Part shown: piece after piece, positions 8,141-12,798 of the stretch
How positions within the stretch are numbered: position 1 is the stretch's first letter
Layout of the letters: the number at the start of each line of letters is the position of its first letter
DNA from: Salpingoeca rosetta
Lineage: Eukaryota; Protista; Choanoflagellata
NCBI GenBank assembly: GCA_033442325.1
Contig: JAWQFM010000021.1
Coordinates: 1 to 12,852, forward strand
Reading direction: 5' to 3'
DNA length: 12,852 nt
Notes under the pieces: generated by a model
The model's database searches: none
What the model saw: only the letters and a program-made list of their open reading frames with translations
What the model was told of the DNA's origin: nothing
Translations under genes and position numbers: made by a program

Positions 8141-10030
8141 CCATCGTTGGTGCCGGCCATCCTAGACGCATTCTCAGACCTCAAGTACGAACACGACGTT
8201 GATGATGTTGGTGGTGGTGTTGTCGATGATGCTGTGTATCTGCGGTGTGATCCTCAGTCACCATGTTCTTGGATTGCGACGCAGCCATTCCACCACCATC
8301 CCTCACCCATCTACCCTCCCCCCCCCCCAACACACACACCACGACCACCCTCATCCACACCCTTGCTGTGCAGTGTGGCGCCGGCACGCCTGCGCCAGAT
8401 CTGCGATCACGTGTTGGGCCAGCTTGGATCGCACAGTCCAGAGTGCCTCCCAATCGTCATCAAGTTTCGCATGCAGCAAGGTGGTGGCGGTACTGTTGAG
8501 GGCGGCGAGGAGTGGGAGATGATGCCACAGTGTGTGACTGTGTGACGGCGATCTCACATGCGCTTGTCTGCAAGTGTCGCTGTGGCTTGTTCTCTCGCAG
8601 CCGCTCCCTCACATGCCTTGCACACACTCACACACATGCACGTTGATGTTCCGCGGATGGAATGGATGCGATTGCGCTGACAGCGAACATGATCGACTCC
8701 TCCACCATGCAACACCAGCAACGGGGCGATGATCACGATGTGTTTGTCTGTGGTGGCTGCCATCAAGAACGGGCTCGCATTTGATGCGCGCATTACAAAG
8801 GCGTGGCTGCGGCCAACTCAAGACGACCACGGCCCAGCCAATCACCGCCCTCGACCTGCTTGTGCTGCTGCTGCTTCACCAAGCACCAGAACGCCCACTG
8901 CCGCGGCGCAGAGACCACCGTGATCAAGCTTGCAAGCACGGGCCGGCTCACCGCCGCCATGGCCGCTGCCACGTTTGCCAGACACACGCGCGCGTTCTTG
9001 ATGTGCTTCAAGTCGATTGTGCACATGATCGACATCCTGAACCGGCAGCAGGAGGCCGCGTGCCGCCACCTCGCCTCCACGGCCGGAGGTGGTTGGGGCG
9101 CTGGTGGCGCACATTGGCACGGGGCAGGCACAGGAGGTGGACGCAGCCATGCCCGTGCTGCTATGTCGCTGGCCACAGGCCACCTGAAGTTGCTGCACCC
9201 GATTGCGCTCATGCTGAACGGCATCCTGGACTGCCTGAGCAACCTGCACTTCATCCACATCCGGCAGCTCTTCCGTGTCCCGACCACGCTCACGTCTGAC
9301 CGCTAGCGCACTGCCGCCGCAGGCCTCAGCATTGATGACGAGAACGAGGATGGTGGGTGAGATTGTGTTTGAGTGTGTGTGTGTGTGTGTGCGGATGAAC
9401 GTGTGTGCATGAACTTGTGCGTTGGGGAAGGCGTGTTGGACAACATCATGTCCTTCCATGAAGAGTGTCTCTCACCCTTCTCATTCAACCACCACCACCA
9501 CCACCAACACCACCACAATCCCTTCTGCATTGCACTGGGTGTACGGCAGCTGTCTCAATCGAACGAAGAGCTGAAACGCACCGGCACCATCGCCGCCGCC
9601 ACCGTCACCCGCACCTTGTTCGCTCTTGCCAACGACGCAGACATCTCCATCGACCGTGCGTTCGTGCATGCGTGTGTGCGTGTGTTCATGTGTGTGCGTG
9701 TTTGCGTGCGTTTGCGCCCTTGTTTGCAGTTCACCTGAGTCCCCCGTGTGGACTTGTCGTGCTCCTCATCATCCACGACTCACCTGTCTCCGCGCCTGTC
9801 CAACAGGCGACCATCTCTCCTCACTGTTGCAGGCATTGCACTTCATCTATGTCGACAAGTGTGTTCAGCTGACATGCTCCGTTGCCACAACGCCTCCACG
9901 TCCACGCCCAGTCATTTGCCCTTCTATCGTGGCGTCGTTTCCTCCCCTCCCCCCACCGCCAGCACCAACAACCATCAAGAGCAAGCACATCTGTCGGGAT
10001 GCGTGCACGGGGATGGCGGACTCACCATCG
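8141..10030 (+). pseudogene. FANCD2: Fanconi anemia group D2 (FANCD2)-like unprocessed pseudogene fragment (middle of the protein)
   Basis: Colinear blocks matching recalled FANCD2 sequence. PSLVPAILDAFSDLN/VAPARLRQICDHVLGQLGSHSPECLPIVIKF (exons 8141-8184, 8374-8480) vs 'VPILDVLSSL..LEDLPVIIKF'. VVAAIKNGLAFDARITKAWL..HR/LDLLVLLLLH vs 'VIKSAIRYEKTISEAWI..HKVFDLVMLFIIY'. EVVGALVAHIGTGQAQEVDAAM vs '[22 protein letters not shown]'. LNGILDCLSNLHFIHIRQLFRV vs '[22 protein letters not shown]'. VRQLSQSNEELKRTGTIAA vs '[20 protein letters not shown]'. Within exons the blocks fall in different frames, with stops at 8678, 8690 and 9304. Confidence 0.85.
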
Positions 10031-11009
10031 ACCCACCGCCGCCACGGCCGCTTGGCTTCAGGTCGCTCGCCGACCCCGACGTACCCGTGTGTTGGCCGCC
10101 GAGACCCCCAAGCGCACGTTACAGCCCGACAACACCGTCAACACGATTGTGGTTTGAGCAGACGGACGGGTGCGCCCCAAGCGCGGGAGACGTGCTCTAG
10201 CTTCTCGTCGGAAGGACACGCACGTGGTCGTCAGCGAGAAGACGCTGCAGGCACCGTTCGAGACGAAGCTGCAGCTGCTGTCGGGGATTGCCGCCGAGTT
10301 TGCGGGTACTGTGCACAGCAAGACCGACGTGGAGACAAGACTGCGGAAGCACGCTGCCGAAACGCGAACCTCTTCGTGTTCCTGATGTCGCTGCAGCCCT
10401 TTGTGTGGTGGAACCTGTCGCACGCTGGGGACGCGCAACCTGAACCCGGAGGAGGAGACGATAGAGGAGGTGCAGCACGAGAGTTGGGCGCATCCCCGAC
10501 TAGCGTGGGCCTGCAGCGACGACGTGCTGTTCCGCACGGTCGCGGACGGACAACGAGTCCAGGCTAGCGACCCAGCCCTCCGACGAGGCTGCTGGGCGTC
10601 GTGCACGTTGAGTAACTGACCTGTTGCCGATGCCCCACACATTCACGTGCTGATGGAACTACTTTTCCGCCAACCGCGCCCTGGAGCTGATACGCAAGGC
10701 GGGCGTTGTGGGCGTGGACGTGGACGTGGGAGTGAAAGAGGACCTGTTTGCTTGCCAGTGTATGGTTGACGTGTGGTGTGGTAGTATGCTCGTTGCTTGT
10801 CAGCCGGTTGAATTGCGTGAAGAGTTTACCAAAGTGTGAAACAAGCAACGTCAAGCAAGTAAAAGCAAGGGGAAAGCAAGCACGTGAAGGAAAGACAGGA
10901 GCAAAGGAGCAAAGTGACCAACCAGCAAACCAGCAAGCACAGACACACACACACATACACACACACACACGCACGCACGCAAACACATACACACACACAC
11001 ATACCTGTG

Positions 11010-12798
11010 CTACAAGACACTGCAGCAGCCACCTGAGTCACTGGGCAGAATTGCACCTTGAACCTTCACATCAGCACCGCGAATGCGCCGCAGTTCGCGC
11101 TCCGCGTCGCGCGTGTCTGGGTGGTCTGGGCCGACCGTGCTTGTGTAACCGTCGAGGGCCCGCTGCATGTAGGCGCAGGCCTGCTCCTTGTCACCGCGCG
11201 TGTCGTGCAGCAGGCCGATGTTCTCAAGCGTCATGGCTACGCTCGAGTGCTTCTCCCCCAGCGTCTCCACCTTGACGGCGAGCGCCTGCTCATAAACCTC
11301 AACCGCCTTGTCGTACTCGCCCTTGTCGGCGTAGGCGGCGCCGAGGTTGTTGTACGTCTGTGCCGTGCTCGGGTGCTTTTCACCCAACGCCTCCACCTTG
11401 ATGGCGAGCGCCTGCTCATAAACCTCAACCGCCTTGTCGTACTCGCCCTTGTCGGCGTAGGCGGCGCCGAGGTTGTTGTACGTCTGTGCCGTGCTCGGGT
11501 GCTTCTCACCCAACGCTTCCGCCGTGATGGCGAGCGCCTTCTCGTACAGCGCAATCGCTCTGTCGTACTCGCCCTTGCTGTAGTAGGCGCTGCCGAGGTT
11601 GTTGTACGTGCTCGCTGTGCTCGGGTGTTTCTCGCCCAGCGTCTCCACCGTGATGGCGAGGTCCTTCTCGTAAAACGCAATCGCTCTGTCGTAGTCGCCC
11701 TTGTTCTTGAAGGCGATGCCGAGGTTGTTGTACGTCTGTGCCGTGCTCGGGTGCTTCTCACCCAACGCTTCCACCGTGATGGCGAGGTCCTTCTCGTAAA
11801 ACGCAATCGCTCTGTCGTAGTCGCCCTTGTTCTTGAAGGCGATGCCGAGGTTGTTGTACGTTATGGCTGTGCTCGGGTGCTTCGCGCCCAACGTCTCCAC
11901 CTTGATGGCGAGGGCCTTCTCATGGTACGCAATCGCCTTGTCGTAGTCGCCTTTGCTGTGGTAGGCGATACCGAGGTTGTTGTACGTCTGTGCCGTGCTC
12001 GGATGCTTCTCACCCAGCGTCTCCACCCTGATGGCGAGGGCCTTCTCATAAAACGCAATCGCCTTGTCGTACTCGCCCTTGCTGTAGTAGGCGAGGCCGA
12101 GGTTGCCGTACGTGTTCGCTGTGCTCGGGTGCTTCTCGCCCAGCGTCTCCACCTTGATGGCAAGGGCCTTCTCATAGAACACAATCGCCTTGTCGTACTC
12201 GCCCTTGTCGCTGTAGGCGATACCGAGGTTGTTGTACAACGCCGCCACGTTCCTCCCCTTCTCCCCTTCAGTGCGGAGGTAAACCGCCAGCGCTGTCTCG
12301 TAGTAGGCAATGGCGCGGTCGTGCTCGCCAAACTGCTTCAGCACCAACCCAACGTGGCCGCACAACTGCGCGAAGGCGTCAGTGCTGTCCTCGCCTCGTG
12401 CCCGCATGGCTTCCACGGCACCCACCGCCTTTTGCAGGCACCACGCGCGCAGCTGGTCCTTCACGGCCTGGTTGACTGCGCTGAAGCCGCCCGCCCACGA
12501 CTGGATCGCCGTGAAGATCATGTGCTTGTCGTGTGGGTTGAAGGCGTCGGCTCGCTCTGCCTGCACGCGCACCAGCGTGTCTGTGACGGCTTTAAAGTCA
12601 CCCGCGATGGCGTTTTCGAGTGCCTGTTCTTCGCTGTTGGGTAGTTGGATGGTGACCTCTGTGCCTTCGTTGCTGATGCCACAGAAGATCTCCCACAAAC
12701 ACCACGCGCGTGTCAAGGGAACAGGGTCTCGCCACGGCATGAGCACCAGCAGCACATGGCCAATGTTGGCAATCGACTGCTTGAACGTGGTGCTCCAC
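11010..12798 (-). CDS. TPR-repeat protein (kinesin-light-chain/TPR_12-like 42-aa repeats) with N-terminal TIR/HET-like domain and C-terminal CaaX; last coding exon only, 5' exons lie beyond the window
   Basis: Acceptor ctttctcgacacccag| at 12799, then an open frame WSTTFKQSIANIGHVLLVLMPWRDPVPLTRAWCLWEIF... through 10 TPRs to SGGCCSVL-TAG (11012-11010). Confidence 0.92.
11241..12248 (-). repeat. Coding tandem array of eight highly similar 126-bp units (42-aa TPR)
   Basis: Consensus TAxTYNNLGxAYxxKGEYDKAIAFYEKALAIxVETLGEKHPS; 8 x 126 = 1008 bp exactly; one divergent capping TPR on each side. Confidence 0.95.

What the first reader, a model, noticed from the sequence alone, without database searches (positions are those of the whole stretch)
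11241..12248. TPR array shows homogenised scaffold with hypervariable positions and recent unit duplications
Seen: the scaffold is nearly invariant, but variation clusters at unit position 3 (A,N,Q,I,Q,S,Q,Q), position 10 (I,L,I,I,I,S,A,A), positions 12-14 (YSD,YYS,YHS,FKN,FKN,YYS,YAD,YAD), position 28 (A/D) and position 32 (K,R,K,T,T,T,K,K). Units 4/5 and 7/8 are near-identical neighbours, and 'TAQT' recurs with different downstream halves, suggesting recombinant units. The whole array sits in one ~1.8 kb exon in an otherwise intron-dense region. Inference: unequal crossing-over or gene conversion reshuffles a repertoire of binding surfaces, like high-internal-conservation repeats of fungal NLRs. 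The i/i+3/i+7 spacing fits one face of helix A, probably the concave groove.
Basis: partly seen in the sequence, partly recalled or inferred. Interest (0 to 1): 0.75.

Follow-up and report, generated by a model that had tools for sequence, protein, structure and literature searches.

The report
Diversifying TPR array in choanoflagellate family
The repeat array is real: it is the binding domain of one member of a family of at least 70 genes in the choanoflagellate Salpingoeca rosetta, with a conserved scaffold, fast-changing groove residues, and pieces copied between family members on other scaffolds, much like fungal immune-receptor repeats but in a different protein architecture.

Summary

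- **Gene and family:** the gene is in Salpingoeca rosetta, 11 kb from a scaffold start. It belongs to a family of at least 70 genes: an unnamed N-domain (weakly TIR-like by fold), a TPR array, and a membrane-targeting tail.
- **Variable positions:** across 197 units from 38 paralogs, variability peaks at unit positions 13, 3, 10, 32, 24, 23 and 14. Positions 3, 10, 13 and 14 correspond to canonical TPR positions 2, 9, 12 and 13, the concave ligand face.
- **Selection:** those four codons give omega 1.5-1.9, against about 1.0 for the helix-B sites and 0.2-0.27 for the scaffold.
- **Scaffold:** it is held by purifying selection, not by fresh DNA homogenisation. Unit-to-unit dS is about 0.3, and invariant residues use several codons.
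- **Reshuffling:** it is real. Close paralogs carry 3-10 units, units 7/8 and 4/5 are recent partial duplicates, and tracts of 174 nt (identical) and 164 nt (2 mismatches) are shared with paralogs on other scaffolds against 12-16% background divergence.
- **Limits of the fungal analogy:** there is no NOD domain, internal identity averages about 75%, and allelic variation is untestable here.

Another first-reader note in this scan covers the same stretch.

The parts
11010..12798 (-). Last exon (exon 2) of a Salpingoeca rosetta gene of the N-domain/TPR/membrane-tail family; the stop codon is at 11012-11010.
   Evidence: Open frame. Acceptor cag at 12801-12799 after a pyrimidine tract. The junction ...EW|WSTTF is seen in annotated paralog proteins and in L010 DNA.
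12423..12797 (-). C-terminal half of the unnamed, weakly TIR-like N-domain, including the invariant motif P..LTRAWCLWE. The first half lies in exon 1, which is hidden in the N gap after 12852.
   Evidence: 53 of 125 columns are invariant across 13 divergent paralogs. Omega is 0.08-0.37 against the 17 close paralogs, mostly 0.10-0.16. Pfam finds nothing. VIA-align matches TIR folds at Z 5.2-6.4 on a relative's model.
12249..12374 (-). Degenerate N-terminal cap TPR unit.
   Evidence: In 42-residue register with the array, HMM score 27 against 90-99 for the canonical units.
12123..12248 (-). TPR unit 1; it keeps the 'first unit' identity across paralogs.
   Evidence: Its nearest relatives are mostly first units of other genes. 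In the close clade, 17 of 21 first units have a first unit as nearest neighbour.
11997..12122 (-). TPR unit 2.
   Evidence: Its nearest relative is unit 3 of L038, 8 nt different.
11871..11996 (-). TPR unit 3.
   Evidence: Its nearest relative is unit 3 of L006 on scaffold C7, 5 nt different.
11745..11870 (-). TPR unit 4 (FKN / D28-T32 type), partial duplicate of unit 5.
   Evidence: 10 of 126 nt differ from unit 5, with nt 10-101 identical.
11619..11744 (-). TPR unit 5 (FKN / D28-T32 type).
   Evidence: Its nearest relative is unit 3 of L005, 8 nt different.
11493..11618 (-). TPR unit 6.
   Evidence: 2 nt different from unit 6 of L002 on scaffold C2.
11367..11492 (-). TPR unit 7, recent tandem duplicate of unit 8.
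   Evidence: 6 of 126 nt differ, all in nt 91-121; the two units are mutual nearest neighbours.
11241..11366 (-). TPR unit 8.
11115..11240 (-). Degenerate C-terminal cap TPR unit (NIGLLH type), conserved across the family.
   Evidence: TPR_10 E = 8e-10. 146 nt with 2 mismatches against L003 and L010.
11013..11114 (-). C-terminal tail ending in CCSVL, a CaaX-like prenylation box with an adjacent cysteine.
   Evidence: Translation. The same kind of ending occurs in L013 and L024, while other paralogs carry a PH domain or a Cys-rich hydrophobic tail.
11885..12058 (-). 174-nt tract identical to the paralog on scaffold C7 (L006), spanning units 2.5-3.9.
   Evidence: Background mismatch between the two arrays is 12.4%; permutation p <= 2e-4.
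11466..11629 (-). 164-nt tract with 2 mismatches to the paralog on scaffold C2 (L002), spanning units 5.9-7.2.
   Evidence: Background mismatch is 15.8%; permutation p <= 2e-4.
10938..11001 (+). Imperfect (CA)n microsatellite, (TG)n on the gene strand, a few bases beyond the stop codon.
   Evidence: A (TG)n run also flanks the exon in most paralogs: 36 of 37 upstream and 30 of 44 downstream.

Best explanation
**What it is.** The 1,008-bp array is the ligand-binding domain of one member of a large Salpingoeca rosetta gene family. Each protein has an unnamed, probably TIR-like N-terminal domain, a helical linker, an array of 42-residue kinesin-light-chain-type TPR units between two cap units, and a membrane-targeting tail. 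In this gene the tail is a CaaX-like CCSVL ending.

**How the protein varies.**
- The units stack into a TPR superhelix.
- About 32 of the 42 codons are held by purifying selection on the fold.
- Four helix-A positions lining the concave groove (unit 3, 10, 13, 14 = canonical TPR 2, 9, 12, 13) change amino acid faster than synonymous sites change.
- Each gene therefore carries a different groove surface.

**How the arrays are remodelled.**
1. Tandem duplication or unequal exchange within an array. This gives units 7/8 and 4/5, and 3 to 10 units in otherwise close paralogs. End units keep their place.
2. Ectopic gene conversion between paralogs on other scaffolds. Its tracts start and end inside units.

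The youngest clade sits mostly near scaffold ends, which would favour such exchange.

**Shown here:** the anatomy, the pattern of selection, the mosaic tracts and the copy-number differences.

**Inferred:** that the groove binds peptides or proteins, and that the family acts as a repertoire of recognition proteins coupling binding to the N-domain at a membrane.
For: **Identity.**
- Pfam TPR_12 E = 3e-161 and TPR_10 E = 3e-121.
- Relatives carry S. rosetta names.
- There are 122 matching places in the genome, roughly 70 genes.
- The 42-residue period is strict in the close paralogs, with occasional 40-, 41- or 36-residue steps in distant ones.
- The AlphaFold model has pLDDT 90.1. Helix A covers unit positions 41'-14 and helix B covers 18-36.
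- The closest solved folds are KLC1/2, LGN, OGT and consensus TPRs.

**Variability.** Entropy over 197 units from 38 genes peaks at positions 13, 3, 10, 32, 24, 23 and 14.

**Mapping.** The CTPR alignment gives unit position p = canonical p-1. Canonical 2, 5, 9, 12, 13, 33 and 34 form the variable concave face (PMC1261162).

**Selection.**
- Parsimony counts give dN > dS at position 13 (p = 8e-4) and position 14 (p = 4e-5). Thirty of 42 codons show purifying selection at uncorrected p < 0.01.
- 52 disjoint close unit pairs, with window units excluded, give omega 1.55 (CI 1.26-1.87) for {3,10,13,14}, 1.01 for {23,24,32,35} and 0.27 for the rest.
- The GY94 ML model on 125 units gives omega 1.93, 0.99 and 0.20. 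The likelihood-ratio test against omega = 1 gives 2dlnL = 8.1.

**Reshuffling.**
- Nearest relatives of window units lie in other genes at other array positions.
- Identical or near-identical tracts of 174, 164 and 85 nt sit in 12-16% background divergence.
- The whole exon is a mosaic of best matches to different paralogs.
- Close paralogs carry 3-10 canonical units while their N-part is 87-94% identical.
- Unit-to-unit dS is 0.32-0.48, against 0.29 gene-to-gene.

**Location.** Twelve of 18 close paralogs lie within 75 kb of a scaffold end (binomial p = 9e-6).
Against: - Omega above 1 rests on short units, a poorly resolved tree and sequences that recombine; recombination is known to inflate such tests.
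- Selection on codon usage in this GC-rich genome could lower dS and so inflate omega.
- The site set was partly chosen by its variability.
- Per-site tests give only about neutral values at positions 3 and 32.
- No atomic coordinates were available, so 'concave face' comes from sequence alignment plus literature, not from measured exposure.
- No ligand, expression or population data exist here.
- The gene's first exon lies in an assembly gap, so its integrity is unknown.
- The scaffold start has no telomere repeat, so 'subtelomeric' is unproven.
Confidence: 0.7

Rival explanations
1. This is an ordinary expanded TPR family. Scaffold residues are conserved for folding, and surface positions merely drift under relaxed constraint, as in all TPRs. 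Duplications and conversions are by-products of high copy number, with no adaptive diversification of a binding repertoire.
For: - Canonical positions 2, 9, 12 and 13 are the most variable in TPRs in general (PMC1261162).
- Per-site omega at positions 3 and 32 is about 1, and the helix-B set is 1.0.
- Codon bias could depress dS.
- Unit-to-unit dS of 0.3-0.5 shows most units are not young.
Against: - The set {3,10,13,14} exceeds neutrality in two independent analyses: CI 1.26-1.87 and a likelihood-ratio p of about 0.004.
- Positions 13 and 14 are individually significant.
- The N-domain of the same genes evolves at omega near 0.1, so the contrast lies within one gene.
Confidence: 0.2
2. This is a fungal-type array of highly conserved repeats in an NLR: concerted evolution within the array keeps the units nearly identical, while a NOD-containing receptor uses them as its sensor.
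For: - Same repeat type: the Podospora 42-residue TPR structures 4Y6C and 4Y6W match at E = 1e-31.
- Same location of variable sites, and repeat-number variation, as in PMC4986451.
- Units 4/5 and 7/8 are 93-95% identical in protein.
Against: - No NACHT or NB-ARC domain appears in the Pfam results for this protein or for any of 49 relatives.
- Mean unit identity is about 75%, and 26 of 28 unit pairs are 62-81% identical.
- Only 28 of 197 units have their nearest relative in the same gene.
- Within-gene and between-gene distances are close: 27.9 against 31.5 nt.
Confidence: 0.05
3. The unit order and the near-identical neighbours are assembly artefacts of a repeat next to a gap near a scaffold end.
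For: The array lies 600 bp from an N gap and 11 kb from a scaffold start. Reads could not be inspected.
Against: - The array contains no N, and every pair of units differs by at least 6 nt.
- The frame is intact across 1.8 kb.
- Dozens of paralogs assembled elsewhere show the same strict 42-residue architecture with other unit orders.
Confidence: 0.05

Closest known systems
Highly internally conserved TPR repeats of fungal NLRs (Podospora anserina; Dyrka et al. 2014, PMC4986451)
   Same: - The same 42-residue kinesin-light-chain-type TPR.
- Variable and positively selected sites on the concave side of the helices.
- Repeat-number differences.
- Evidence of recombination within and between family members.
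- An N-terminal domain of HET/TIR flavour.
   Different: - There is no NACHT or NB-ARC domain.
- Internal identity averages about 75% rather than above 85%.
- Synonymous divergence between units is about 0.3, so homogenisation is local and partial.
- Exchange is mainly between paralogs, not within an array.
- The C-terminal tails target membranes.
- Allelic polymorphism is untested.
Kinesin light chain TPR domain and the 42-residue TPR-like class (PDB 3NF1, 7AI4, 6FUZ; 4Y6C/4Y6W)
   Same: Sequence and fold: E = 1e-31 to 4e-38 by sequence and Foldseek E of about 1e-11. The units have the same length and the same conserved Asn pair in helix A.
   Different: KLC has six fixed, individually conserved repeats and is a single-copy cargo adaptor. 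Here unit number and order vary among about 70 paralogs, and the groove residues diversify.
General TPR ligand-site hypervariability (Magliery and Regan 2005, PMC1261162) and designed consensus CTPR proteins
   Same: The scaffold is close to the CTPR consensus (E = 6e-111 to a 16-repeat CTPR). The variable positions coincide with canonical 2, 9, 12 and 13.
   Different: Canonical positions 5 and 6 are fixed as Asn-Asn here. An 8-residue extension of helix B adds further variable sites (32, 35). Here variability is measured among units of one recently expanded family, with omega above 1.
TIR domains (SARM1, plant TIR-NLRs, bacterial ThsB)
   Same: A relative's N-domain model aligns to many TIR folds over the same 175 residues, at Z 5.2-6.4. 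An invariant W-x3-E motif recalls the TIR catalytic-glutamate motif; that resemblance is from my own knowledge and was not aligned here.
   Different: There is no Pfam TIR or HET match at E <= 10, no Foldseek match and no profile match to PDB sequences. The Z values lie in the range that unrelated models also reach.

Membership tests
Pfam TPR_12 / TPR_10 (42-residue KLC-type TPR) | Matches to the family HMMs above the curated cut-off, repeated in tandem. | tested here: met
   TPR_12 scores 524 bits (cut-off 30.1) in 10 stretches. TPR_10 scores 393 bits in 9 stretches.
Pfam TPR_12 / TPR_10 (42-residue KLC-type TPR) | Helix-turn-helix units forming a superhelix. | tested here: met
   AlphaFold model with pLDDT 90.1 and alternating helices of 16 and 19 residues. 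Best structural matches are TPR superhelices.
Fungal-type highly internally conserved (HIC) repeats | Repeats more than 85% identical over at least 100 residues (PMC4986451). | tested here: inconclusive
   Units 4/5 (95%) and 7/8 (93%) pass, covering 168 residues. The other 26 pairs are 62-81% identical and the mean is about 75%.
Fungal-type highly internally conserved (HIC) repeats | Repeat-number polymorphism between alleles. | not testable with these tools
   Only one genome is available. As a proxy, close paralogs carry 3-10 canonical units.
Fungal-type highly internally conserved (HIC) repeats | Positive selection at concave-face positions. | tested here: met
   Omega is 1.55 (CI 1.26-1.87) and 1.93 (likelihood-ratio p of about 0.004) for positions 3, 10, 13 and 14. 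Recombination and codon bias are caveats.
Fungal-type highly internally conserved (HIC) repeats | Concerted evolution: units more alike within an array than between genes. | tested here: not met
   Within-gene units differ by 27.9 nt on average against 31.5 between genes, and only 28 of 197 units have their nearest relative in the same gene. Exchange is mostly between paralogs.
NLR / STAND receptors | A central NACHT or NB-ARC nucleotide-binding domain. | tested here: not met
   Neither appears in the Pfam scan of this protein or in the precomputed Pfam lists of 49 relatives. Full-length paralogs go straight from the N-domain to the TPRs.
TIR domain | Match to a TIR family HMM. | tested here: not met
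   No TIR family at E <= 10 in either exon piece, in read-through references or in TPR-free relatives.
TIR domain | Flavodoxin-like TIR fold. | tested here: inconclusive
   VIA-align gives Z 5.2-6.4 to SARM1, RPP1, ThsB, MyD88 and others over model residues 158-333. Foldseek finds nothing at E < 0.1, and Z below 8 can arise by chance.
HET domain (PF06985) | Match to the HET HMM. | tested here: not met
   No match in the proteins. The genome-wide six-frame search also found none, though its control genomes did not ring either. The three-block motif resemblance is from memory only.

The most novel reading that the evidence does not exclude
The family is a NOD-less innate-recognition repertoire in the closest unicellular relatives of animals. 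A TIR-like effector domain is wired directly to a diversifying TPR sensor and anchored to membranes by interchangeable tails (prenyl, transmembrane or PH). The genes sit near chromosome ends, where ectopic gene conversion continually generates new groove surfaces. This would be functionally analogous to fungal NLR repeats or to subtelomeric variant-gene families, and possibly used against bacteria or viruses.
Probability: 0.3. Interest if true: 0.8.

Novelty: new variant of a known kind. Interest (0 to 1): 0.6.

Why it matters
Repeat arrays that diversify a binding surface by duplication and gene conversion are a recurring way for organisms to build recognition repertoires. Fungal NLRs and lamprey VLRs are examples. 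This array shows the same signature in a choanoflagellate, in a simpler architecture without a nucleotide-binding switch.

That would give a tractable model organism in which to ask how recognition repertoires arose before animals. It would also let one test whether TPR grooves in this family bind microbial or self ligands. Even on the conservative reading, the family is a clean natural experiment on which TPR positions tolerate and attract change.

Tried and rejected
- **Pfam on the N-domain.** I scanned each exon separately, by reference, and also in-frame read-through references that include the intron. Nothing matched but weak TPR hits. TPR-free relatives were also blank for TIR and HET.
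- **HET HMM over the genome.** No hit, but the control genomes were silent too, so this is uninformative.
- **Profile of the exon-2 N-part against PDB sequences.** Only chance-level hits.
- **Foldseek of the N-domain model.** Nothing below E = 0.1.
- **ESM Atlas look-up.** Only unnamed protist clusters.
- **Exact-protein look-up of the window's product in other assemblies.** Not on record.
- **Relic PH-domain or transmembrane tail downstream of the stop.** None found.
- **First conversion-tract test.** The mismatch penalty was too mild and merged tracts. I reran it with a stricter penalty.
- **Nearest-neighbour clustering by clade as a test of concerted evolution.** Uninformative, because the window's clade is consensus-like and attracts units from all clades.
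- **Second batch of paralog loci.** About 24 distant paralogs are therefore not in the unit set.
- **Joined exon-1/exon-2 protein.** I did not build or search one. Annotated full-length paralog proteins returned by the search were used instead.
Full report
**1. What is there**

Tandem Repeats Finder reports a single array at 11241-12237, with period 126, 7.9 copies and 87% matches. On the minus strand an open frame runs from the window's end to a stop at 11012-11010.

Reading the minus strand from 12852 downwards shows a pyrimidine tract, a cag acceptor at 12801-12799, and then coding sequence starting at 12798. Paralogs with complete upstream sequence have a first exon of about 127 codons. 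It is followed by an intron of about 250 nt rich in (GT)n and the same acceptor.

Annotated full-length relatives carry the junction ...EW|WSTTF. In this locus an N run begins right after 12852 and hides exon 1.

The organism is Salpingoeca rosetta, because all close relatives carry PTSG names. The window is the first 12.85 kb of a 1.27-Mb scaffold. I did not build or search a joined exon-1/exon-2 protein. Each exon was searched by reference, and the full-length proteins used were those returned by the protein search.

**2. The observation**

- In the frame of the gene, eight 42-residue units occupy 12248..11241 without indels, between a degenerate cap unit on each side.
Twenty of 42 positions are invariant in the window.
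- Units 4/5 differ at 10 of 126 nt and units 7/8 at 6 of 126; all other pairs differ at 14-29.
- In both near-identical pairs the differences are clustered. Units 4/5 are identical over nt 10-101, and units 7/8 over nt 1-90. Each pair therefore shares a tract of about 90-100 nt rather than a whole unit.
- Pfam assigns the array to TPR_12 (E = 3e-161) and TPR_10 (E = 3e-121).

**3. The family**

A six-frame search of the genome finds 122 matching places, which merge into roughly 70 genes.

The 42-residue period is strict in the close paralogs, with occasional 40-, 41- or 36-residue steps in distant ones. In the 21 genes closest to the window's, the number of canonical units ranges from 3 to 10. 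The non-repeat part of the same exon is 87-94% identical in DNA in the 17 of them where it could be read.

The C-terminal ends differ as cassettes between a conserved C-cap and a conserved 3' flank:
- a PH domain in most paralogs;
- a Cys-rich hydrophobic tail in some;
- a CCSVL or CCSIL ending in the window's gene and two others.

**4. Where the variation lies**

Over 197 canonical units from 38 genes, Shannon entropy peaks at positions 13 (3.5 bits), 3 (3.1), 10 (2.8), 32 (2.6), 24 (2.5), 23 (2.3) and 14 (2.3). Position 12 (0.66 bits) is not hypervariable and position 28 is only moderately so (1.2 bits).

The AlphaFold model of the exon product has mean pLDDT 90.1. It places helix A at unit positions 41'-14 and helix B at 18-36. 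Aligning the units to the designed consensus CTPR gives unit position p = canonical TPR position p-1, with an 8-residue insertion at unit positions 31-38.

Magliery and Regan found canonical positions 2, 5, 9, 12, 13, 33 and 34 to be the most variable in TPRs. All lie on the concave face, and 2, 5, 6, 9, 12 and 13 contact ligands in HOP (PMC1261162). Unit positions 3, 10, 13 and 14 are exactly canonical 2, 9, 12 and 13. Canonical 5 and 6 are a fixed Asn-Asn pair here.

Positions 23, 24, 32 and 35 lie on helix B and its extension, and I cannot say which face they occupy. D28 occurs with T32 in 32 of 34 cases (Fisher p = 1e-18). It is one half of a coupled i/i+4 pair, not a free site.

**5. Is there an excess of non-synonymous change?**

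Three analyses agree in direction.

| Analysis | Helix A {3,10,13,14} | Helix B {23,24,32,35} | Remaining codons |
|---|---|---|---|
| 52 disjoint close unit pairs, window units excluded | 1.55 (bootstrap CI 1.26-1.87) | 1.01 | 0.27 |
| GY94 codon model on 125 unique close-clade units, shared scaled tree | 1.93 | 0.99 | 0.20 |

- A parsimony count of changes on a tree of 190 unique units gives dN > dS at position 13 (p = 8e-4) and position 14 (p = 4e-5). Positions 10 and 35 are marginal, positions 3 and 32 are about neutral, and 30 of 42 codons show purifying selection at uncorrected p < 0.01.
- In the codon model, fixing omega at 1 for the helix-A set costs 4.07 log-likelihood units, which is p of about 0.004.

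Caveats: the units are short, the tree is weak, recombination is demonstrably present and inflates such tests, and codon bias may depress dS. I read this as good but not final evidence for diversifying selection at the groove positions, and as neutrality at the helix-B sites.

**6. Is the scaffold 'homogenised'?**

Only in part.
- Invariant residues use several codons. Positions 2 and 37, for example, each show more than 60 synonymous changes on the tree.
- Mean dS between the window's units is 0.32. It is 0.12 for units 7/8 but 0.30 for units 4/5.
- Units within a gene are barely closer than units between genes (27.9 against 31.5 nt). Only 28 of 197 units have their nearest relative in the same gene, although that exceeds the 5 expected by chance.

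The near-invariant scaffold is therefore maintained by selection on the protein. On the other hand, unit-to-unit dS (0.32 in the window, 0.48 in the close clade) is not much above the gene-to-gene dS of the non-repeat part (mean 0.29). An array inherited unchanged from a deep ancestor would be saturated. The arrays have thus been turned over on the time scale of the clade's expansion.

**7. How units are reshuffled**

The nearest relatives of the window's units lie in other genes and often at other array positions:
- unit 6 is 2 nt from unit 6 of the C2 paralog;
- unit 3 is 5 nt from unit 3 of the C7 paralog;
- unit 2 is 8 nt from unit 3 of the C30 paralog;
- unit 1 is 11 nt from unit 6 of the C20 paralog.

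No paralog is collinear with the window. Collinear comparison finds the following tracts, each with p <= 4e-4 against shuffled mismatch positions:

| Paralog | Tract | Window coordinates | Background mismatch |
|---|---|---|---|
| L006 (C7) | 174 nt identical | 11885-12058 | 12.4% |
| L002 (C2) | 164 nt, 2 mismatches | 11466-11629 | 15.8% |
| L004 (C10) | 85 nt identical | 12053-12137 | 14.8% |

The tracts begin and end inside units, and the non-repeat part of the exon is a mosaic too. First units keep first place in 17 of 21 cases and last units keep last place in 12 of 21, while internal units are interchangeable. This is the pattern expected from unequal exchange inside arrays.

The conclusion it pointed to is nevertheless borne out at the DNA level.

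**8. Setting**

Twelve of the 18 closest genes lie within 75 kb of a scaffold end, where at most 18% of the genome lies (binomial p = 9e-6). TTAGGG arrays mark some scaffold ends but none is listed for this one.

The 3' flank of the gene is also duplicated among paralogs. The exon is bracketed by (TG)n runs in most family members.

**9. The rest of the protein**

The exon-2 half of the N-domain is extremely conserved. Fifty-three of 125 columns are invariant across divergent paralogs, and omega is mostly 0.10-0.16.

- Pfam, HET and TIR models find nothing.
- A PDB profile search finds nothing.
- Foldseek finds nothing.
- A full structural scan of a relative's model (pLDDT above 90 over most of the domain) puts many TIR-superfamily folds at Z 5.2-6.4 over the same 175 residues. 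These include SARM1, RPP1, ThsB and MyD88.

That is suggestive but within the range of chance matches.

Dyrka et al. report HET-domain homologues in choanoflagellates and relate HET to TIR (PMC4986451). I could not show that this family is what they saw. One relative from an environmental assembly joins the same N-domain to ankyrin repeats instead of TPRs.

**10. Comparison and verdict**

The closest known system is the set of highly conserved TPR repeats of fungal NLRs. It has the same repeat type, the same location of selected sites, repeat-number variation and recombination (PMC4986451). Membership fails on three points:
- there is no NOD domain;
- average identity is below the 85% criterion;
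- within-array concerted evolution is not the dominant mode.

It works like that system, but it is a different architecture in a different lineage. I found no paper describing this family in four relevant literature searches.

Two first-reader notes of this scan on the same stretch propose a TIR/HET-like-TPR-lipid-anchor receptor and a CaaX ending. My results agree on the architecture and leave the TIR assignment open.

I rate the finding as a new variant of a known kind.

Noticed in passing
window 11013-11036; L013, L024, L003, L010, L011 and the PH-tailed paralogs: The C-terminal tails are interchangeable cassettes between a conserved C-cap TPR and a conserved 3' flank. The window's gene and two others end in CCSVL or CCSIL (CaaX-like), several end in a Cys-rich hydrophobic tail, and most carry a PH domain. 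All three would put the protein at a membrane.
   Followed up: partly
G000 scaffolds: C21:11 kb, C2:49 kb, C33:29 kb, C1:29 kb, C7:24 kb, C16:22 kb, C29:16 kb, C20:15 kb and others: The paralogs closest to the window's gene are concentrated near scaffold ends: 12 of 18 lie within 75 kb (binomial p = 9e-6). More distant paralogs are internal. TTAGGG arrays mark some scaffold ends, but none is listed for C21.
   Followed up: partly
window 12423-12797 and exon 1 of paralogs (e.g. L010:820-1200): The N-terminal domain is unnamed in Pfam. It carries the blocks FxSHAW, FFWFDxFxxNQ and the invariant P..LTRAWCLWE. It has a weak TIR-like fold signal (Z of about 6), and ESM Atlas finds look-alike unnamed clusters in haptophytes, green algae and diatoms.
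   Followed up: partly
P0048 (environmental assembly): The same N-domain is fused to ankyrin repeats instead of TPRs, so the repeat sensor appears to be swappable, as in fungal NLRs.
   Followed up: no
window 10938-11001; introns and 3' flanks of L002-L051: The large exon is bracketed by (TG)n microsatellites on the gene strand in most paralogs: 36 of 37 upstream and 30 of 44 within 300 nt downstream. In several paralogs the intron run is in frame, so the whole gene reads as one open frame.
   Followed up: partly
window 9540-11000: The 3' flank of the gene is 81-88% identical to the 3' flanks of many paralogs, so the duplicated unit extends at least 1.4 kb beyond the stop codon.
   Followed up: partly
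window 12853 onward (L031:3853-5290): An N run of about 1.4 kb starts immediately after the window and covers the expected position of exon 1. It could be an assembly gap or withheld sequence; I cannot tell which.
   Followed up: no
L011 (C16), L022 (C3), L019 (C57), L005 (C1): Several paralogs look damaged or chimeric. L011 and L022 have the start of the array in another frame. L005 loses the frame in its last units. L019 and L022 share four identical units. L011 has two identical non-adjacent units (1 and 5).
   Followed up: no
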